The notes beneath the pieces are model-generated. The model was not told the origin of the DNA. It ran no database searches and was given only the letters and a program-made list of their open reading frames with translations. From contig NC_135667.1 in assembly GCF_964188315.1 (NCBI RefSeq), positions 17,112,001-17,176,000 on the forward strand: 64,000 bases of DNA, in the 5' to 3' direction. This document shows, piece after piece, positions 4,406 through 63,560 of this stretch. The translations under genes were made by a program, and so were the position numbers. The first letter of the stretch is position 1. Each line of letters begins with the position of its first letter. Source of the DNA: Podarcis muralis (lineage: Eukaryota).

Positions 4406-11064
<6,659 letters not shown>

Positions 11065-18895: not shown

Positions 18896-31211
<12,316 letters not shown>

Positions 31212-45532: not shown

Positions 45533-45758
45533 CAGTGGTATCTCAGGTTAAGAACTTAATTTGTTCTGGTGGTCCGTTCTTAACCTGAAACTGTTCTTAA
45601 CCTGAGGTACCACTTTAGCTAATGGAGCCTCCCACTGCCACCACACTGCTGGAGCACGATTTCTGTTCTCATCCTGAAGCAAAGTTCTTAACTCGAGGTA
45701 CTATTTCTGGGTTAGCGGAGTCTGTAACCTGAAGCGTATGTAACCCGAGGTACCACTG
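45533..45758. mobile_element. Tc1/mariner (Tigger-like) MITE
   Basis: TA-flanked CAGTGGTA...TACCACTG. Same family as the copies at 15587 and 59571. Confidence 0.8.
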
Positions 45759-45874
45759 TAATAATAAATGCTTCCTTTCTATTGGCACACATCCACCTAA
45801 AGGTGGGCCACCCCCACAAGATGCGGCTAATGAGTAAGCCAGAGTCGGCAGAGGAGAGGAATGGAAGGCAGCTC

Positions 45875-48800
45875 CTACCACGAATGGCGCCTCTGGTGGT
45901 TCACGACGTGCGACCTCCGCGTGAATCTCTTCCCGCAGTAAGCGCACTGGTGGGGCTTCTCCCCCGAGTGGACGAGGAGGTGCTTCGTGAGGGTGGTGTT
46001 CCTGTTGAAGCTGTTCCCGCATTCCGGGCACTGGTAGGGCTTCTCGCCCGTGTGGATCCTCTCGTGCCGAATGAGGTCCCACCTCTTGCGGAACCTTTTC
46101 CCGCACTCCTTGCACAGGTGGCGCTTTGCTTCCGGGTCGGCGAGGACTCCTCTGAGCCCCCTGTCCTTGATGACCCGGACCGAGAGGCAGCCCCCCTTCT
46201 GCTGCATCCCCACGCTGCGCTCGTTCCCGTGCGGCCTTCTAGGGTCTCCTCTGGGGAAAACAGCCTCCCCGAATCCTCCCGGAGCTCTCCTTCCCGGCTC
46301 TTCCACTGCAGGCTGGTGAAGCTCCTTGGCAACAGCTCTGCTTGCAAAGTAGCTTTCTGTTGGGAGAAAAGAGAGAGGGGCGTTTGGGGTGGAGGCGCCA
46401 ACATGCCATGCTCTGCATGCTGGTGATCTTGGGCTCAGTCCTGGGCATCTCTGGTAACAGAAAGGAGGGCAAGCAGAGCTCCTGGGGACTGCAGTTTGTT
46501 AAAGGCTGCTGTATCGCAGAAACCTAACCCTACAAAAATGGAAAAGCCATCCTTCTGAGGCACTTCCTTGTTGCAGTTACCTTGCAAGCTGTTATCCTCG
46601 TCAGCTGGTTTGGTTTCCCTGCGAAGGTGTCTCTGTGTCGAGTCCGACAGGTCTACAATGGGGGAGTTTACAATAACCATCTCAATCGGCACCGTTATCT
46701 GAAAGGAACAGAACGGGGAACGGTTGAATTTAGATGGCGCAGAACAAGAAGCCCCGACAATAACGGACTGGCATTACAAGCTACAAGAATTTGCTGAAAT
46801 GGCAAATACCCTGAGAGGCGATTCAAAACAAAAATTTATGGAAAAGTGGGATAGATATAAAACATATGTTCAAACATACAGTAAAGGTTCACTATCTATG
46901 CTGGCATTTGATTGACGTTGGAGTGAGACTGAGTTGAGAAATAAGACTAAGAGCACATATTGACATAGGAATGTATTAGATAATATGTAAAGAAATATAT
47001 AATAATAAGAGTACATTCATTTGTAAAAAAGGAATATACAACGGGAAAGGCAGGAAGTCTAGTGTGTTGGTATGTATATGATTTTTGGAAAAAATTGTTT
47101 GTTTTTTTCTTTGTTCTTTCTTTCTTTTCTTTGTTTGTTTCATTTTCTTTTTAGGTATATAAAATCTGTATATAATTTTTGTATACATGTTGGAAATTAT
47201 AGTAAGTCCTGTAATGTAATATGACAATGTTTACCGATGAAATATAAGAATGTTAATAAATAAATAAAAAGGAAAAAAAAGAATTTAGATTGTGCAGAAA
47301 CTGATGCCGAGTGGCACCAATAGAAGCTCAGTTTCTTTATTCAACAAGTCAGGTTTCTAACCATTATGGGTACACAAAGATAAGTTTCAATCGCATGGGT
47401 TTGAAATGAAATGTTTTGCCAGAAGAAAAATGAAAGCGTGGTCAAGACTCCCCGTGGCCAAATGACGAGATTCCCCATACAAATGTTGACAGTGACCACA
47501 ATCTACGGTTCTGGGAGAAAGGCAGGATATATAACAACAATAACAATAATAATATAATACCATCTGAAGGATGTGAATAAATAAGTGTTAGCAGCCAGGG
47601 TGCATACAGATTATCAGAGCAGAAACACTGGACGAGGGAAAGTGGAGCAACAGCCTTGCAGGGAATGAAACCAGAAAAGAACTGCCGTCGCTGTGCCTCA
47701 AGAGGCTGGCAGAGTGTGATGCAATCACCACAGCTAGTATATGAACAGAGTTTGTTGACAAGCTCCCCCCCCCCCCCCCCCGGCAATTCTGTGGTGAGGA
47801 ATAACCTTCCCACTTTCAGACGAAACCACAGCCCACTTTGTGTTGGCCACAGGGGGCTACAGCGGATTTTTAATTGATCTCCTGTGCATCCAACACACAC
47901 AATCTACACTGCTTTTAGAGGCAAAATGTTCAGTATCTGCTGTTACTCAATAGTTTGTAGGTATTCCCCCCCCCCCAAGTACATATACAGTGGAACCTCA
48001 GTTGTTGAACGCTTCAGAAGTCTAATGTTTTGGCTTTCGAACGCCGACAACCAGAAAGGGAATGCTTTTGTTTTCGAACGCGCCTCAGAAGTCAAACGGC
48101 TTTCGAGGGGCGTTTTTCCGTTTTTTCCAATGGATTTTGCTGACAGCCCATTGCACCTCAGTTGTCGAACGTTTCAGAAGTCAAACAGTCTTCCAGAATG
48201 GATTATGTTCGACAACCGAGGTTCCACTGTATTCAGGGAAAGATGGAATCTGCCAGGACAGTTCTCAAGATGACTTGCACCCTCGCGTCAATTTTTCACA
48301 CTGTTCTTGCTGATTATACCCCTAGCGATATGTCCCCACCCTTTCTGCTAGACAGAATTCAATTTCCTGTTTGCAAACCCATGAAACCCTGTCGGCACCC
48401 CCAGAAAAGACCAGGGCCAATTATGTCCCATACCTGTTGGGCCCATCTCTCGGTCTCCTGCTGCTCCTGCAAAAACTCCTCAGCCAGAGCCACGGCCCGG
48501 TCGCAGGTCTCAGGCCCACGTTCCCTGATCCAGTCTTGCATTTCCTGCGGCAGGATGACAAGGAACTGCTCCAAGATCAGCAGGTCCAAGATCTGCTCCT
48601 TGGTCTGGCTCTCGGGCCTCAGCCAACGGTGGCAAAGCTCCTGGAGCTGCTGGCACGTTCCTCGTGGCCCCTCGGCGTCCTGGTAACAGAAGTGCCGGAA
48701 GCCTTGGCGATGGGCCTCTGTGGCCATGTAGCTGTCCAGCCTCAAAATGGCCACCTTCACCTTCCCATAGTCGCCCTTGTCTTTCGCATCCAAACCAAAA

Positions 48801-49225
48801 TAGGCCTGCTGGGCTTGGCCACTGAGGACGGGCACAAGTCGAGTTACCCACTCCTCTCTAGGCCACTGAGAAGCATCGGCCACTCGCTCAAAGGTGGCCA
48901 GGTAGGCCTCAGTGTTGCCCCCCTGGGACAGTGGAGGCAACTGTGGGTTGTCCCGCACTGAGGCCGCCACTGGAGTGGGCACCACCTCCAACACCCGCTG
49001 CCATTGGCAATCCCAGCTCTGAGGCGGCTCCTCTGCCAGCTCCTGCTTCACCCTGGGCACAGACGCTCCTCTCGCTAGCTCCTCGGCAGCGCCACAGGGG
49101 CTTACGCTGGGGAATTTACCATTTCCTTCTGGTGAAGCGCTCGCTGCTTGGCTCTGAGCCTCCATTTTGACTCGAACCGGCAATGGGAGTGCCAGGTCTG
49201 CCATTTCTCCTTGGGGAGCCGCCAT
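45875..49225 (-). CDS. SCAN-domain C2H2 zinc-finger protein with extended Gag-capsid-like N-terminal region, about 463 aa
   Basis: Exons 49225-48434 (phase 0), 46698-46581 (phase 1) and 46356-45875 total 1392 nt in frame. SCAN motif LQELCHRWLRPESQTKEQILDLLILEQFLVILP...WIRERGPETCDRAVALAEEF. Three C2H2 fingers joined by TGEKPY and SGEKPH linkers. No KRAB exon found. Confidence 0.85.
46745..47280 (+). mobile_element. 5'-truncated L1-like LINE
   Basis: Encodes PTITDWHYKLQEFAEMANTLRGDSKQKFMEKWDRYKTY (like an L1 ORF2 C-terminus), followed by an AT-rich 3'UTR and an AATAAA/A-rich tail. TSD of about 19 bp: gaatttagatggcgcagaa (46726-46744) / gaatttagattgtgcagaa (47281-47299). Confidence 0.75.
47988..48229. 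mobile_element. Tc1/mariner (Tigger-like) MITE
   Basis: TA-flanked TIRs CAGTGGAACCTCAGTTGT / ACAACCGAGGTTCCACTG. Confidence 0.8.
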
Positions 49226-54127: not shown

Positions 54128-55283
54128 ATGTCTGTAGGCTCCAGTCTGGTGAGGATGAGTGCCCTCTTCCGGCCACGCCTTCTGATGTTACTGGACCACC
54201 CGCATCGCGCTGTCCACGCCTCCTGTGCTGCCTTCGCCGGACACAACAAATGGTCCAAGGTCAAAAACATTAAGGGTCCGAAGGATGAAGCTCGGGGCCG
54301 TGTCTTCCAGAAGCTTAGCATGTTGATCCGACTGGCTGTAAGAGGTACAGCGGCAGGATTTCTGTTGCTATTCTGTAATGGAAGCGGAGATTCCTAGCAC
54401 ACAGCTAGGCTCCCATGTTTCCGCTTGCTGCGTGGCAAGTGTGCCACCGGTCTCTGGCAAGCATGGGCGAACCCCAGCTTTGCCCACATACTTGGAGCAG
54501 CAAATCTGGTCAGTGGCCATCCCCGCAGTTCCTGTTCCCCAGCTCCCAATATTTATACAGAATGCACTAGACTACATTCCCCTCCATTATGCTGCATTTT
54601 CTTATTCTTTTTTTGATAATTCTTTTTATTAATTTTCAGTTACAGTCCAATAATAGCCTCATTATAACAATACCAAATTATAATACCATTACTAATACCA
54701 ATCATTCAAATACCGAATTATATAATTTAAGTGGCCACTAGATTTGATGGTTTGATGATTTTCTTCATTTCTGCATTCCAAAATATTATTTATTTCAATT
54801 ACATTCCAGTCAAAATAATAATCCCTTATACAACAGCTGCAATATTAATAACTTCTATTCATGTTGGCACATTAAATGATTTATAGAACTACAAGCAAGG
54901 CACTCAGACTATAGCCTAGTTCTTCCTGTGTGTGGCAATTATTCTGTCCCTGGTGTTTCTTCCTTACGCTGAATTTTCAATTGTAAACAATTTAGGGCAA
55001 AGACCCTCTTGCGTTCCCATCATTCTGCGAAGCGAGACAACGCTTTATGATAAACCATTCGTTTAAGGGTAATCTTCTGTCTTCCTGCGTTGTCTTTGCC
55101 AGAAGGTGGACCCAACCCGGAACTGAACACGAATCTTGCCAATATTATTGAGCAGTGCCGCAGCAAGAGCATGCCCAAGGCCTCCATCGAAGCAGCACTC
55201 ACCCGCGGGGTACGTTTCTGAGCTGTTTGGATTCAGGGCGCAGATGCGGATGCTGCCACCTCTTTTGTGTGAGAGGAGAAAGT

Positions 55284-55314
<31 letters not shown>

Positions 55315-58091
55315 CTGTGTCTGGTGGGGTAACAAGGAAATGGTAGTGATTGGAAAGGGGTTGATTGGTCTGTGTCACTCACCGTCCTTTGTGTCCTCAA
55401 GCCACCCTTACCCAAAACTTAAATTGGTAGTAAAAGGTAAAGGTAAAGGTACCCCTGCCCGTATGGGCCAGTCTTGCCAGACTCTAGGGTTGTGCGCCCA
55501 TCTCACTCAAGAGGCCGGGGGCCAGCGCTGTCCGCAGACACTTCCGGGTCACGTGGCCAGTGTGACATCGCTGCTCTGGCAAGCCAGAGCCGCACACGGA
55601 AACGCCGTTTACCTTCCCGCTAGTAAGCGGTCCCTATTTATCTACTTGCACCCAGGGGTGCTTTCGAACTGCTAGGTTGGCAGGTGCTGGGACCGAGCGA
55701 CGGGAGCGAACCCCGCCGCGGGGATTCGAACCGCCGACCTTTCGATCGGCAAGTCCTAGGCGCTGAGGCTTTTACCCACAGCGCTACCCGCGTCCCTAAA
55801 TTGGTAGTAGTAGTGGAAAATCTTTTGATTCTCCACATGGCACTGAACTACAACTCCCATCATCTAGGTGTGGGTGTGTCTGTTCCTCAAGATACAACTT
55901 ACTGTTCTTTTCAACTTTTCTCTTTTGGTAGGAAAAAATCAAATCGTCCTACCTTCTGTATGGGGTGCGAGGCCCTGGCGGCTGCACCCTACTAATTGAG
56001 ATGCTGACGGACAATACGAAAAGGTCCTTCAATGAAATCCGGCATCTTCTGAACAAACACGGGTTAGTGTGGGGGTGAAGTGGTCGGCTGGGGGTGGGGA
56101 CCACATCTGGCTTGCAGTGGTTGAGAGGGTCTTACTGGGTTGGAGGAGAGGGTTCTGGATTATTTGCTTCCCGGTGGTCACAGTGCGGCTTTTCTGGATT
56201 CCCTTTGGACTGGAGAAGTTCAAGCATTCCCCATCATATGGCGATGGCGGACAGCAGATGTTGGCTGGTCCTTCTCCTCCGTGTTCCCCACCGTCCCAAC
56301 CTCTTACTTGTTGGTGCTGAATCTCCAACGGCTCCTTGACTCAGGCAGATTCCCCATGCATTTCAGTGTTGCAGCTGCAAACATTCAACTCCAATGCTTA
56401 GAGGGCTGTGGGGCTGGGATATCAGGGGCAGGACAGAGGCGGTGGAGACAACACATCCTTGCTCTCCCCACCTCATCTCTACATGATGGGGAACATGTGA
56501 GGAAGATTCTGTGTCCAGGGCAGCTGTCTACCAGCTCCATCTGGTACGCAGGCTGAGACTCTACCTGCCTGCAGACTGTCTTGCCAAAGTGTTGCATGCT
56601 CTGGTTATCTCCCCCTTGGACTACTGCAATGCGCTCTACATGGGGCTACCTTTGAAGGTGACCCGGAAACTGCAACTAATTCAGAATGCAGCAGCTAGAC
56701 TGGTGACTGGGAGTGGCCGTTGAACTACATTGGCTCCCAGTACATTTCCGAGCACAATTCATAGTGTTGGTGCTCACCTTTAAAGCCCTGAACAGCCTCG
56801 ACCCAGAATACCTGAAGGAGCATCTCCACCCCCATCGTTCAGCCCGGACACTGAGGTCCAGCTTCGAGGGCCTTCCGGCAGTTCCCTCACTGCAAGATGT
56901 GAAGCTGCAGGGAACCAGGCAGAGGCCTTCTTGGTAGTGGCACCCACCCTGTGGAACACCCTCCCACCAGATGTCAAGAAAATAAACAACTACAGAAGAC
57001 ATCTGAAGGCAGCCCTGTTTAGGGAATTTTTTAATGTTTGATGTTTTATTGTGCTTTTAATATTCTGTTGGAAGCCACCCAGAGTGGCTGGGGAAACCAT
57101 GGGTCTCCTACTGGGTCTCCCATCTGTGACCTTTGGCTCTACTGGCTGGGGCTTATAGGAGCTGGCATTCAGAGTGTGTCAAAATGCCAGCCTTGCCCAA
57201 CCTGATGCCCTTGAGACATTTTCAACTCCAGTTACCATCTACTGCCAGCCAGCATGACTGCTTTGGCTGGGGCTTATGGGAGTTGTACTCCAAAGTACTT
57301 GGAAGCCTCTGGGTTGGGGAAGCCTGCAATAAGGGGTGTTTTGGTTGGGGTTTTTTAGTTTCTCTCTGGGAGGAGAGGAATGTACTCTAGTAAGTTGAAG
57401 GTGGGACCATAGGAACCTGATTTCTCTGGGAAGAACATGGTTAAATAATGTGTGTATGATACAGGACTGAGGCCTGCACGTCAGGCATGAGTTCTGTATG
57501 CAGCCTCTGAGCAAACCATATTCCCGCACTGCTTCTAGTTTTGAACGTCACTATCACTTAATGTCTGTGCTGGGGGGCGGGCGGATTGCTGCCCCCCACT
57601 TTGTGTTCCCTGCAGAGGACAACTTGTCGACGGGGCCCAACATAACTTTGAGAAGAAGGGCGTTGTCACGGTGAGCAGCGAGAACCGGTCCGGCAGCACC
57701 ATCACCTTGGACCAGGCCCTGGAGCTGGCTATCGAGGCTGGAGCGGAAGATGTCCAAGAGGAGGAAGATGAGAACGAGAAGATGCTTCTGAAGGTGAGAG
57801 GCAGGTTTCTCATGCAGCTGCACTACCGTGTTCGAGTCTGCGAAGCGTTTGCAGCTGAATGCCTTTCTTCTTTTGCCCCCTTCTGCCCAGTTCGTTTGCT
57901 CTGTGCCAACATTGCGCCAGGTCCGTGAAAAGCTCGACTCGCTGGGCCTCTGTTCTGTCTCTGCCGGCCTCGAGTTCATCCCGACCGTCAGCACCCAGTT
58001 ATCGGACGAGGAGATGGATCAGGCGTCGCGGCTGCTGGAGGCTCTGCGGGACAACCTGGATGTCGTCCGGGTGTACGACAATATTGCATAG
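54128..58091 (+). CDS. TACO1: Translational activator of cytochrome c oxidase 1 (YebC/PmpR family, mitochondrial), 277 aa
   Basis: Exons 54128-54344, 55103-55209, 55932-56062, 57616-57793 and 57891-58091 total 834 nt in frame. A presequence-like N-terminus is followed by [43 protein letters not shown] and DVVRVYDNI motifs. 5'UTR acceptor at 54086. Confidence 0.92.
55287..55320. repeat. (GT)n microsatellite
   Basis: Direct reading. A similar (CA)n tract lies at about 27819-27838. Confidence 0.9.
55433..55796 (-). mobile_element. Young Sauria-type SINE in TACO1 intron
   Basis: Perfect 13-bp TSD TAAATTGGTAGTA at 55420-55432 and 55797-55809. Same subfamily as the copy at 44976. Confidence 0.85.
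56505..57098 (+). mobile_element. L2-clade LINE fragment (degenerate RT C-terminus)
   Basis: [39 protein letters not shown] and [25 protein letters not shown] motifs in broken frames. Confidence 0.85.
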
Positions 58092-59788: not shown

Positions 59789-60625
59789 TATATATATATA
59801 GTATGTACCATTAAAACAAAGCCCACTGCTTCCTACCCTGAAAAAAGCCAGCCCTCCCAACTATTGCCAAAATCTGACCAAAACTGGGAGATTGTGGAGG
59901 CCAAGAAGTCAACAAGAGAGAATCCTTTAATGGAACTGTGTTCTCACATACCTGATCTCAAAGAGTCCTGCAGGCAGGGGCAAAATTTCAAACAGCTTTA
60001 TTACAAACAGATTTCACTGATGAGTCCTGTACACAAGCCTCTTATCATACAGGCCCAAGAAAGTAGAAGAACCTGTCACAATGCTTTGTTCAGTCGCCAT
60101 CAGCTCCTCCTCCGATGCAGATGTCTCTTTGTAGAGAGTTAAGCATGCCCACATGATTCTGCCAATACTGGCCTAATTCTGCTCCGGCTTGACCCAAGGA
60201 AACCCCCAACCATTAGTGACAGTGATTTTCATTAAAGCAGAAACACCGAAAGAAGAAAATTGACAAGCAATCATTTGAAGTACTTATTTCAATAGTGTGT
60301 GTGAATGTAAATACATGGCTACTCCAGGGGAGAGACAGCCAACACATTGCCCTCCAGGTGCTGTTAAGACTGCAATTCCTATCATGCCTGATCATTGGCC
60401 ATACTAGCTCAGGCTGATGGGAGCTGTAGTCCAACCGCATCTGCAGGGCACCACATTGGCTACCCCTGTTAGGGTGTCTCCATGCAAACTGATGCCCATG
60501 AAGAATAAAAGAGACAGCTCCAGCTTCAAAGCAGAACTAGCAGTTTATGACATCTATGCAGTTGCAGCTACTAGAAAACTCAGGTGGAATAATGGACGGC
60601 TCCGGCCTGTGGCCTCCGGCCCAAT

Positions 60626-61648
60626 TCAGTCAGTGTCACTCTCTGGGCTTTGGGGGATGGGGGACCCTCCTGAGGGAGCGCAGGGCAGAAAAAGTTCTGC
60701 ATATCCGTTGCCGCTCGGTGGGGAAGGGGTGGCGGTGGGGAAGTCCAGGCCCACAGGCCCAGCCAGGCCTTGGCTTTGGAAAGCCTCATAGTCAGTCCCA
60801 GGGTTTCCTGGGGGCAACCCCTCAGGAGGGGGGCCATCCGCTTGGCGGCACACCTCAAAGCGCAGCCAGCGGTACCCGGTGCACTTGCGAGCTCCTGGGC
60901 AGCTCTGGATGAGGTGCTGAATGGCCGGGTGGGAGAGGCCAAAGAACTCGGCCCCTGCCGGCTCAAGCTGCGCTGCTCCCACAGCCTCCAGAAGCTGAGC
61001 GTGGCAGGCGTCAGGAGTGGAGCCAGCGAACACGCAGCCCGGCTCGTCCTCAGGGGCAATCTCAAAGTGCGGCCTGCCACCGCCGTCCTTGATCTGGCAG
61101 GTGTAGAGGCAGCGGTGGACTGGTCTGCGGGTGCTGGCGAAGATCCTGGTGCTGCAGTAACCGACGGGATAGATGGCCGTCTCTGTGTGGAAGCCTGGGC
61201 GGTCGGGAACAATTTCCCCCAAGCTGTAGACGGTCAGTGGACCCAACACAATGGGTAAAACCGGCCGCCCGGAAGGATCCAAGGGAAGCGGCGGAACCAG
61301 CCGGCGGACGCTGAGATCGGGGGCCGCCCTGCGCTTGGAGGCCCGGCCGTTCTCTTTGCCTTTGCGTTCCCGACGGGGCTTGCGGGCAGCCGGCTCATCC
61401 GGCGAGGGCTGCGAAGCGGAAGCGACGGCCGGCAGAGGAGGCTCGTCTTCCGCCAGGGCTTGCGCTTGCAACAGGCGAGCGAGCAGGAACCGGCGCTCTT
61501 CCCGGACACGCAGGTATTTCGCCTCGAGCCTGGCAATCTCGTCGCACAGAGCGGCGTTCTCGTAAACCAGCACTTTGGCCGCACGGCGCAGGCGCCGGAA
61601 TTTCAGGCGGTAACGCTCGCCTTGGTTTTTGCGTAGGGTTTTCTTCAT
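60626..61648 (-). CDS. TBRG1: TBRG1 (NIAM)-like protein with FYRN/FYRC domains, intronless CDS, 340 aa
   Basis: Single ORF from GCCATG at 61648 to TGA at 60626. MKK...YRLKFRRLRRAAKVLVYENAALCDEIARLE coiled coil; LDPSGRPVLPIVLGPLTVYSLGEIVPDRPGFH...IYPVGYCSTR (FYRN); YTCQIKDGGGRPHFEI...GAEFFGLSHPAIQHLIQSCPGARKC (FYRC). Acceptor at 61683. Minus-strand AATAAA at 59997-60002. Orthologue versus retro-paralogue is unresolved. Confidence 0.85.
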   Translation of the reverse strand: MKKTLRKNQGERYRLKFRRLRRAAKVLVYENAALCDEIARLEAKYLRVREERRFLLARLLQAQALAEDEPPLPAVASASQPSPDEPAARKPRRERKGKENGRASKRRAAPDLSVRRLVPPLPLDPSGRPVLPIVLGPLTVYSLGEIVPDRPGFHTETAIYPVGYCSTRIFASTRRPVHRCLYTCQIKDGGGRPHFEIAPEDEPGCVFAGSTPDACHAQLLEAVGAAQLEPAGAEFFGLSHPAIQHLIQSCPGARKCTGYRWLRFEVCRQADGPPPEGLPPGNPGTDYEAFQSQGLAGPVGLDFPTATPSPPSGNGYAELFLPCAPSGGSPIPQSPESDTD

Positions 61649-63149
61649 GGCAAGGGGGGTGGGCAGGATGGAAGGGGGCTCACTTGAGCAGAGAAAAGCT
61701 GGGGAGGAGAAAAGATTCAAGAAGCAATTCAAACATTAACACACACACGCACACAAAAATCATACAAACATTTCCAGCTCAATATTATCCCCAGGATCAG
61801 AGTGAATAATCATCTTTCATAATGCTAAAAAGGCTCAGATACACATTCAGATGAACAGTATACACCTTGGGTGTACTGCTATCCCTAAATCCAGGCACTA
61901 GAATGTTTTTGTACCTTCAGGGGTGCCTGAAATTATGCTCAAAAGTACATAGGATCTTTTTCTCTCTCTAACTGGATCTTCACCTGCACATGATACAGAA
62001 GGATCACTGTGGGTTCTTAGCAGCATCTGCTCAAAGAATCTCCTACAAGGAAATTGCATGAGTTTTCCATTCCGACATTTCCATCCCATTTTGCTACCAT
62101 TTCCCTCCGGTAGCAGTAAAATATTATGGGATTTTAAGAGGCATGACTTCCTGGCCAGTTTCTTATTTTAGTTATTAAAAGCATCAAACAAAGGGCAGGC
62201 AGTTCTGTAGCAGTGGGGTAAACTGGAGTAATAGAAAATATTAAACACAACCTCCATAAAACTAGGAGTACTTAGCAAAGCTCCTCTCCGGAATGGAAAT
62301 GGAATGAGGAAGCCGTAGCCAAAGAATTTAGAGAGCTTTGACAGCAATTGATAAAATTATGTATAGCAAGGATGGGGAACCTCCAGAGGTTGCTGAACTG
62401 TAACCATAATCTCTGGCCATTGATCACATTGGCTGAGGGCTGAAGGGAACTAGAGTGCAATATCCGGAGAGCCACAGGTTTCCCCATTCTGATATGTAGT
62501 GTGGATATGTGTTTTCCCACATCCCTGTTCCATATTACACCATACCGCCCTGTGATCCTCAGATGAAGGGTGGTAAAAACAAGAACTCAGGGTGATTCAG
62601 TGAAATGTACTGGCAGTAGGATCATGACAGATCAGGTGACTGGCCCATCTAGTCTAGCATCATGGAAGGTATTTGTCCTATACACACACGTCATACATGT
62701 AAAGCACATGCAACACACGTTTACAGCTCATGGCTCCCACCCCTAAGAATCCCCCGAGTTAAGGGTGCTGGGAACTGCAGCTTTGCAAGGGTAAAACTAC
62801 AACTCCCGGGTTTGTTTTTTTGAGATGCCGCATGTTTTAAACGCATGGTGTGGCTCTGTCGTCTAAGTTTTACTCAAGGCAGACCCAGTGAAATTAATGG
62901 GCATGACGAAGCTAGGGCGCGTTCATTTCAACAGGCCTACTCCTGAGCAAAACTTAGTTGCCTACCATCCCTGCTCTCACAGCGGCCAGCCAGATGCAAG
63001 CCTAAAGCAGCACCGAGTTGCAATTTATGCTTGCAACTTATGCTGAATTTGGGGCGACACATGCAGCGCTTTTGCCAAGGAAGCGGCTTCAAATGATGCA
63101 ACTGCCTGCAAACAATCGATGCTCAGCCACGGGACCCCCCCCCCATTCC

Positions 63150-63560
63150 CCTCTTTCATTTGCAGCCCCCCAGCTTCTCACCCAAACGTTGCTGCTGCTG
63201 CTGCTGCTCCCTTTGCTCTCCCGGAAGCTCTGGCGGGGACCGGAAGCTTCCCTGCGCCGCGCGCGCCGCCTGCGTAACCCTTTCCTCCCTGGACAAAAGG
63301 ACAGCCTGTTTTCCAATCAGGAAGGGCGGGGGGGGATCGAGGAGGGGTCGCCAACCTTTTGCTTCGGACGGGGCATCAGCGGGGTAACAATGTCAGAATG
63401 TGGTCTGAAAGGTCCTGAGCGATGCTGGTCACAGTGCGAAAAGCCCTCCTCGTTGCGCCTGGCGCACCTCGTGCTCCCTCTGCGGAGTGGGAGCCAGCCC
63501 TGCACTGCTGCTGCATCGCTGTCTCTCTAGGCCGGAGAAAAGTCATATCCCTACGCCTGC
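63150..63560. promoter_or_regulatory. CpG island, candidate promoter and non-coding exon 1 of the TBRG1-like gene
   Basis: Minus-strand donor TGG|GTGAGA at 63182/63181 and a (CAG)6 tract at 63191-63208. Two CCGGAAG ETS sites (about 63220 and 63240), a GCGC-rich tract at 63254-63272, CCAAT at about 63313 and a GC box at about 63324. Confidence 0.6.

What the first reader, a model, noticed from the sequence alone, without database searches (positions are those of the whole stretch)
59975..63300. Intact TBRG1 retrogene candidate with an acquired 5'UTR intron and CpG promoter
Established: mammalian TBRG1 is a multi-exon gene. Seen: the entire coiled-coil plus FYRN plus FYRC coding region is one 1023-nt ORF without stops or frameshifts. 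It is preceded by a splice acceptor 34 nt upstream of a good Kozak ATG, has a candidate non-coding exon in a CpG island 1.5 kb upstream, and has a downstream AATAAA. The CDS is strikingly CpG-rich and shorter than human TBRG1 in the linker regions. Inference: an old, selected retrocopy (no polyA remnant or TSD visible), either a second TBRG1 or a replacement of the parent. The CpG-rich body hints at an unmethylated or germline-expressed locus.
Basis: partly seen in the sequence, partly recalled or inferred. Interest (0 to 1): 0.7.

Follow-up and report, generated by a model that had tools for sequence, protein, structure and literature searches.

The report
Lizard TBRG1 is an intronless retrogene
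The only TBRG1 gene seen in this lacertid lizard has a coding region with none of the eight introns that fish and mammals share, so it is most likely an old reverse-transcribed copy that replaced the original gene in reptiles; the gene is already annotated, but its retro-origin was not reported in the papers searched.

Summary
Window 60626-61648 (minus strand) is an intact 1023-nt, 340-aa ORF with an INO80E-like coiled coil, FYRN and FYRC. It is 98.5-99% identical to the annotated TBRG1 of Podarcis raffonei.

Echidna and milkfish TBRG1 share eight coding introns at the same positions and phases. All eight are missing here. They are also missing in Sceloporus, Tiliqua, a sea turtle, a caecilian and the axolotl.

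In three squamate families the gene sits between a head-to-head C2H2 zinc-finger gene and a tail-to-tail TACO1. In echidna it sits next to SIAE. dN/dS among squamates is 0.06-0.09.

A 5'UTR intron is plausible. An ETS motif, a donor site and a 19/21 block of the candidate exon 1 are kept in Sceloporus.

Verdict: the canonical sauropsid TBRG1 is probably an orphan retrogene, a new member of a known kind.

The parts
60626..61648 (-). TBRG1 coding sequence in a single exon: 340 aa plus stop at 60626-60628. Coiled coil (INO80E-like) at aa 13-59, FYRN at 131-189, FYRC at 192-265.
61649..61698 (-). 50-nt 5' leader of the coding exon, with no upstream ATG. It begins right after the conserved polypyrimidine-AG acceptor.
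61699..63181 (-). Inferred 5'UTR intron of 1483 nt, GT at 63181-63180 and AG at 61700-61699. It is AT-rich and CpG-poor.
   Evidence: Inferred only; there is no RNA evidence in this species.
63182..63260 (-). Candidate non-coding exon 1. The 5' end (TSS) is not known. It holds two ETS-type CTTCCGG motifs at 63246-63240 and 63227-63221, no ATG, and the donor tgg|gtgaga.
63100..63500 (.). Upstream CpG island and candidate promoter, with ATTGG at 63317-63313 and CCGCCC at 63329-63324. It faces a head-to-head C2H2 zinc-finger gene whose start codon lies about 0.8 kb beyond the window end.
61000..61700 (.). Second, stronger CpG island (o/e 0.73-1.21) covering the 5' two-thirds of the CDS. It is present in all sauropsid and caecilian orthologues examined.
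59975..60625 (-). 3'UTR of about 650 nt, with AATAAA at 60002-59997. It contains one copy of a dispersed repeat at about 60350-60470.
57828..58091 (+). Last coding exon of the neighbouring gene TACO1, tail-to-tail with TBRG1. This is a context marker, not part of the gene.

Best explanation
This locus is the lizard's working TBRG1 gene (NIAM, a nuclear FYRN/FYRC protein). Its coding exon descends from a reverse-transcribed, fully spliced TBRG1 mRNA.

The ancestral bony-vertebrate gene had at least eight coding introns, which mammals and ray-finned fish still keep. In the ancestors of turtles and squamates a processed copy was fixed among zinc-finger genes; in squamates it sits next to TACO1. 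It came under strong purifying selection and appears to have taken over from the multi-exon parent, which makes it an orphan retrogene.

Inferred expression, not shown: transcription starts in a CpG island about 1.6 kb upstream that carries two ETS sites and a CCAAT box and faces a zinc-finger gene. A short non-coding exon is spliced over a 1483-nt intron to an acceptor 50 nt before the ATG. The transcript ends at the AATAAA 624 nt after the stop.

The CpG island over the 5' part of the CDS may be a carried-over or secondary promoter region.
For: - The 340-aa ORF is intact, with full-length FYRN, FYRC and INO80E-like domains. Its FYR domain aligns over the whole solved human TBRG1 domain, PDB 2WZO, E 2e-60.
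- The echidna gene has 9 coding exons that rebuild the database protein exactly. Milkfish has the same eight introns at the same alignment columns and phases 0,2,1,0,0,2,2,1.
- The CDS is a single exon in the window, P. raffonei, Sceloporus, Tiliqua, Caretta and Rhinatrema, and by gene span in Ambystoma.
- The gene order ZNF, TBRG1, TACO1 is kept in Lacertidae, Phrynosomatidae and Scincidae. Echidna TBRG1 abuts SIAE instead.
- Pairwise dN/dS among squamates is 0.06-0.09, with dS 0.9-1.4.
- Turtle isoform X1 joins an upstream exon (ending at L001:9337) to an acceptor 43 nt before the main ATG. That acceptor aligns with the lizard and skink polypyrimidine-AG.
- The ETS motif, the donor and a 19/21 block of the candidate exon 1 are kept in Sceloporus; only 2 of 300 shuffles reach that score.
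- Two protein word searches returned only the intronless type from squamates and turtles.
Against: - No poly(A) remnant or target-site duplication is visible, and no similarity to parental UTRs survives. Retroposition is therefore inferred from intron loss and changed neighbours only.
- The ancestral tetrapod position of TBRG1 was not established. Look-ups for coelacanth, lungfish and shark failed, and the milkfish neighbours match neither context.
- TACO1 was not seen within 10 kb of the turtle gene.
- There is no RNA evidence for this species.
- Absence of a multi-exon parent in the lizard genome was not tested genome-wide.
- The candidate exon 1 shows no significant similarity in Tiliqua or Caretta.
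Confidence: 0.75

Rival explanations
1. Intron loss in place. The original gene lost its eight coding introns by recombination with its own cDNA, which typically spares 5' introns. Later rearrangements then changed its neighbours. There was no retroposed copy at a new site.
For: An intron survives only at the extreme 5' end. There is no poly(A) or TSD relic. The ancestral synteny is unknown.
Against: The 5' acceptor, 43-50 nt before the ATG, matches no fish or mammal intron position; the nearest milkfish intron lies about 42 codons upstream. Neighbours differ completely from the echidna SIAE context. Precise loss of all eight introns at once is the usual signature of a processed copy.
Confidence: 0.13
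2. An extra copy. The multi-exon parent still exists elsewhere in the lizard genome, and this locus is a second, functional TBRG1 paralogue.
For: The lizard genome could not be searched. Only the best 120 hits of each protein search were listed.
Against: NCBI-annotated squamates (P. raffonei, Sceloporus, Tiliqua) and Caretta contribute only the intronless protein to both hit lists. A parent-type protein at about 50% identity should have ranked among the listed mammal and fish hits.
Confidence: 0.1
3. A processed pseudogene, or an untranscribed ORF kept by chance.
For: No RNA data could be obtained.
Against: The frame stays open at identical length (340 aa) in three squamate families, with dN/dS 0.06-0.09 at dS near 1. 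Gene order is conserved. Turtle models include spliced isoforms.
Confidence: 0.02

Closest known systems
Orphan retrogenes, i.e. retrocopies that replaced their parents (Ciomborowska et al. 2013, PMC3548309; Carelli et al. 2016, PMC4772013; examples named there include RNF113A, MARS2 and TRMT12)
   Same: It is an intronless CDS derived from a multi-exon gene that outgroups keep. No parent is seen in the same lineage. Purifying selection is strong: 0.06-0.09 here, against a mean of 0.088 reported for human orphans. A CpG-island promoter is associated with it, as in nine of ten orphans in Carelli et al..
   Different: Here humans and other mammals keep the parent, while reptiles (and, with an intronless CDS, amphibians) carry the processed form. 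Human-centred screens could therefore not find it. Parent loss and expression are not yet demonstrated.
Retrogenes that gained a new 5' exon and intron, and retrocopies driven by a neighbour's bidirectional promoter (Carelli et al. 2016, Fig. 2E-F and Fig. 5A, e.g. NXT1 and HTR7P1/HEBP1)
   Same: A candidate non-coding exon in a CpG island upstream is spliced to a site just before the retro-derived CDS. A head-to-head neighbour gene is present.
   Different: The zinc-finger gene's start codon is about 1.6 kb from the candidate exon 1, and in P. raffonei it has its own CpG island. Sharing of one promoter is therefore uncertain. The junction is supported only by comparison, not by reads.
Mammalian TBRG1/NIAM, with the solved human FYR domain PDB 2WZO
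   Same: The domain order is the same: coiled coil, FYRN, FYRC. The FYR domain aligns end to end. They are reciprocal best family hits.
   Different: It is about 50% identical overall and 60-70 aa shorter, through deletions in the linker and tail. It has a single coding exon against nine, and different neighbours. The squamate stem branch is very long, 0.86 changes per site.

Membership tests
TBRG1 (NIAM) protein family | Adjacent FYRN and FYRC domains forming one FYR module | tested here: met
   Pfam FYRN E 3.7e-26 and FYRC E 2.4e-18, both nearly full length. PDB 2WZO is covered at residues 1-146, E 2e-60.
TBRG1 (NIAM) protein family | N-terminal basic coiled coil (INO80E-like) before the FYR module, with best hits annotated as TBRG1 | tested here: met
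   PF24237 E 7.7e-9 at residues 13-59. Nearly all of the 120 listed hits are named TBRG1 where a source names them.
Orphan retrogene | The parent in outgroups is multi-exon, with introns older than the copy | tested here: met
   Echidna and milkfish share eight intron positions and phases.
Orphan retrogene | The copy lacks all parental coding introns | tested here: met
   tblastn gives one uninterrupted match in the window, L001, L002, L004, L006 and L007.
Orphan retrogene | The copy lies at a new genomic site | tested here: inconclusive
   Squamates have ZNF, TBRG1, TACO1 and echidna has TBRG1, SIAE. The ancestral position is not known because outgroup look-ups failed.
Orphan retrogene | Poly(A) tract and target-site duplications | tested here: not met
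   None is visible, and no UTR homology to other classes survives. This is expected for a copy older than the turtle-squamate split, so it is weak evidence against.
Orphan retrogene | Open frame under purifying selection | tested here: met
   dN/dS is 0.06-0.09 among squamates and 0.13-0.21 between squamates and turtle.
Orphan retrogene | The parent is absent from the same genome | not testable with these tools
   The lizard genome could not be searched. Indirectly, only the intronless type comes from sauropsids in two protein searches.
Orphan retrogene | The copy is transcribed | not testable with these tools
The only indirect support is NCBI turtle isoforms with a spliced upstream exon.
Retrocopy using a neighbour's bidirectional CpG promoter | A head-to-head protein-coding gene within about 2 kb, sharing one CpG island | tested here: inconclusive
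   A head-to-head C2H2-ZNF gene is present in three families. Its ATG is about 1.6 kb from the candidate exon 1, and it has a separate CpG island in P. raffonei. Neither TSS has been mapped.

The most novel reading that the evidence does not exclude
One retroposition in the stem of tetrapods produced the intronless TBRG1. It then coexisted with the multi-exon parent until after the amniote split. Afterwards the lineages sorted reciprocally: mammals kept the parent and lost the copy, while amphibians and sauropsids kept the copy and lost the parent.

The alternative that the data also allow is two or three independent replacements of the same parent (caecilians, salamanders, sauropsids), which would be unusual too.
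Probability: 0.3. Interest if true: 0.6.

Novelty: new member of a known kind. Interest (0 to 1): 0.42.

Why it matters
TBRG1/NIAM is studied in mammals as a regulator of ARF, MDM2 and p53. If reptiles, and perhaps amphibians, run this function from a retro-derived gene with a recruited promoter, then regulatory comparisons across tetrapods are not like for like.

The gene would also be a clean case for asking how an orphan retrogene rebuilds expression. It adds a non-mammalian orphan retrogene to a list drawn mostly from human-centred screens.

The distribution (intronless in amphibians and sauropsids, intron-bearing in mammals and fish) poses a testable question: long coexistence with reciprocal loss, or repeated replacement.

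Tried and rejected
The exon 1 to exon 2 junction, the TSS and the tissue pattern are untested.
- A Logan contig of a related squamate (L008) carries unspliced upstream sequence and says nothing about splicing.
- Number of origins: the careful tree leaves caecilians with mammals (92/92) and salamanders with sauropsids (87/87), both unstarred.
  - treekit AU tests did not finish and one script timed out.
  - A plain LG+F+G4 AU test rejects neither an all-intronless clade (p 0.056) nor an amniote clade (p 0.144). It marginally rejects amphibian monophyly (p 0.033), but that constrained search was cut short.
  - A count of shared derived residues gave too few sites.
- UTR-level homology between classes: none.
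- Candidate exon 1 in Tiliqua and Caretta: no significant local similarity.
- Literature: TBRG1 with retrogene, with intronless, or with "missing in birds" gave nothing relevant. Earlier scan notes hold nothing on TBRG1.
- Rejected: the idea that CpG richness of the CDS marks a retrogene or germline expression. The echidna multi-exon CDS is as CpG-rich, and other squamates are much less so.
- Joined sequences: spliced models of TACO1 and of the zinc-finger neighbour were not joined or searched. The echidna and milkfish exon chains were joined only inside scripts, to check them against the stored proteins and to measure base composition. Nothing joined was sent to a search tool.
Full report
**What is in the sequence.**
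On the minus strand, 61648 to 60626 is one open frame of 1023 nt: 340 codons plus a stop, with no frameshift. Pfam finds an INO80E-like coiled coil at residues 13-59 (E 7.7e-9), FYRN at 131-189 (3.7e-26) and FYRC at 192-265 (2.4e-18), the latter two almost full length. The FYR module aligns over the whole solved human TBRG1 domain, PDB 2WZO, at E 2e-60. The best database hit is the annotated "transforming growth factor beta regulator 1" of Podarcis raffonei (E 2.4e-223; 98.5% identity by tblastn). Sceloporus and Tiliqua follow at 88%, both also 340 aa. The flanks are 91-94% identical to the P. raffonei chromosome, so the window comes from a close lacertid relative. Chance is not a serious alternative.

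**Is the intronless state derived?**
- The echidna gene spans 8.4 kb. I rebuilt its nine coding exons with GT-AG junctions so that they reproduce the database protein exactly.
- In milkfish, the part homologous to tetrapod TBRG1 has eight introns.
- On a protein alignment the eight fish introns and the eight echidna introns fall in the same columns, the last within two columns of a gapped region, and have the same phases 0,2,1,0,0,2,2,1. Several exon lengths are identical: 71, 147, 98 and 111 nt.
- These introns therefore predate the split of ray-finned fish and tetrapods.
- All eight are absent from the window and from P. raffonei, Sceloporus, Tiliqua, Caretta and the caecilian Rhinatrema. 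In each of these tblastn gives one uninterrupted match.
- In the axolotl the called gene spans exactly 406 codons plus a stop.
- Echidna exons scattered over 8 kb map back to back on the caecilian and turtle genes.
- Precise removal of every coding intron is the signature of a processed, mRNA-derived copy.

**Place in the genome.**
- In Lacertidae, Phrynosomatidae and Scincidae the order is the same: a head-to-head gene of 878-898 aa, then TBRG1, then a tail-to-tail TACO1. The window is colinear with the P. raffonei locus.
- Pfam on the large exon of the P. raffonei head-to-head gene shows C2H2 zinc fingers.
- The turtle gene also sits between C2H2 zinc-finger genes. TACO1 is not within 10 kb of it.
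- Echidna TBRG1 abuts SIAE. From my own knowledge, human TBRG1 does too, at 11q24, while human TACO1 is on 17q23.
- The processed gene is therefore in a different neighbourhood from the intron-bearing one.
- I could not fix the ancestral position. Look-ups for shark, lungfish and coelacanth were not on record, and the milkfish neighbours resemble neither context.

**Selection.**
Pairwise Nei-Gojobori dN/dS among four squamate lineages is 0.06-0.09 at dS 0.9-1.4. Against P. raffonei it is 0.08, and against the turtle 0.13-0.21. The gene is functional. The protein tree shows very long stem branches for sauropsids (0.47) and squamates (0.86 changes per site). Change was rapid early and constraint tight afterwards.

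**Expression model (inferred).**
- *Turtle model.* Isoform X1 (P0009) maps as an upstream exon ending at L001:9337 (cag|GTCAGT), a 620-nt intron, and an acceptor whose exon starts 43 nt before the main ATG.
- *Acceptor.* In an alignment of the region before the ATG, that turtle acceptor lines up with a polypyrimidine tract and AG in the window (AG at 61700-61699, exon from 61698, 50 nt before the ATG). The same motif occurs in Tiliqua. Sceloporus and an unnamed squamate have similar sites nearby.
- *Promoter and exon 1.* A CpG island covers 63100-63500 with o/e 0.69-0.79. It holds two CTTCCGG motifs (63246-63240 and 63227-63221), an ATTGG (63317-63313) and a donor, tgg|gtgaga, after 63182.
- *Conservation.* Sceloporus keeps one CTTCCGG, an aligned GTAAGA donor and a 19/21 block just upstream. 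Only 2 of 300 dinucleotide shuffles reach that score. Tiliqua keeps a CTTCCGG but shows no significant block, and the turtle shows none.
- *Leader and 3' end.* The spliced leader would have no upstream ATG. The first AATAAA lies 624 nt after the stop, at 60002-59997.
- *Neighbour.* The zinc-finger gene's ATG lies about 0.8 kb beyond the window end, and in P. raffonei it has its own CpG island. A shared bidirectional promoter is possible but unproven.
- *Second island.* A stronger CpG island (o/e up to 1.2) covers the first 500-650 nt of the CDS. It starts sharply about 100 nt before the ATG in every sauropsid, and in the caecilian it is continuous with an upstream island. It may mark a second, proximal start site or a carried-over parental island.

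**What the CpG content does not show.**
The whole-CDS CpG o/e is 0.77 here, 0.72 in P. raffonei, 0.49 in Sceloporus, 0.57 in Tiliqua, 0.65 in the turtle and 0.72 in the multi-exon echidna CDS. GC3 is 0.72 here against 0.55-0.58 in the other squamate families. The richness is partly specific to the lacertids sampled, and it is not a hallmark of the retrogene.

**How old, and how many events.**
The processed gene, and probably its 5' intron, predate the turtle-squamate split. The intronless CDS in a caecilian and a salamander raises the question of one early event or several. The gene tree supports tetrapods (100/99) but not their internal order. The AU tests are undecided: all-intronless clade p 0.056, amniote clade p 0.144, amphibian monophyly p 0.033 from an unfinished constrained search. 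Shared derived residues are too few to decide. Neither protein search listed a bird, crocodilian or frog TBRG1 among its best 120 hits. One unnamed Logan protein (P0011, 76% identical to the turtle) could be from any of these groups.

**Comparison with what is known.**
Retrocopies that replace their parents are an established class, the orphan retrogenes. Their typical features are strong purifying selection, CpG-island promoters and frequent gain of 5' exons (PMC3548309; PMC4772013). This locus fits that class on the features I could test. Loss of the parent and transcription could not be tested, and poly(A) and TSD relics are absent, as expected at this age. The gene itself is already annotated as TBRG1.

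**Limits and housekeeping.**
The echidna and milkfish exon chains were joined only inside scripts, for checking against stored proteins and for composition. TACO1 and the zinc-finger gene were never joined.
- No locus was taken for human, and no N runs were touched.

Noticed in passing
protein searches: No bird, crocodilian or frog TBRG1 appears among the best 120 hits of either the lizard or the turtle query, although turtles, squamates, caecilians, salamanders, mammals and fishes do. This could mean loss in archosaurs and anurans, or just gaps in the data. P0011 (401 aa, Logan contig, 76% identical to Caretta) is of unknown taxon.
   Followed up: partly
tree; AU test: Amphibian TBRG1 is not monophyletic in the gene tree: caecilians group with mammals and salamanders with sauropsids. 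Forced monophyly is marginally rejected (p 0.033, from an unfinished constrained search). This could be hidden paralogy, separate retropositions or long-branch artefact.
   Followed up: partly
P0013, P0034, P0099, P0125 and other fish hits: Shark, ray-finned fish, coelacanth and lungfish TBRG1 proteins are 465-631 aa and carry an N-terminal HARE-HTH domain (PF05066). Every tetrapod protein lacks it, whether intron-bearing or intronless.
   Followed up: no
window 60626-61648 against L004, L006 and L007: The lacertid CDS has much higher GC3 (0.68-0.72) and more CpGs (74-83) than Sceloporus or Tiliqua (GC3 0.55-0.58, 43-50 CpGs). The two Podarcis-like sequences already differ by 9 CpGs at dS 0.08, which suggests ongoing GC-biased change at this locus.
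   Followed up: no
L001:9222-9337 (turtle): In Caretta the upstream exon is annotated as coding in isoform X1 and adds 53 residues. The lizard candidate exon 1 has no ATG.
   Followed up: partly
window 60350-60470, with copies at 9687, 16192, 22147, 29797, 29965, 34487 and 57271: A dispersed repeat sharing a 21-nt core occurs 8 times in the window, against 0.01 expected. One copy lies in the TBRG1 3'UTR.
   Followed up: partly
window 18914-31140 (+), 45669-49225 (-), about 55000-58091 (+): Other genes in the window are a type-I coronin with several exons on the plus strand, a SCAN plus C2H2 zinc-finger gene on the minus strand (already noted by the scan), and TACO1. The locus sits in a zinc-finger-rich region, as does the turtle orthologue.
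   Followed up: no
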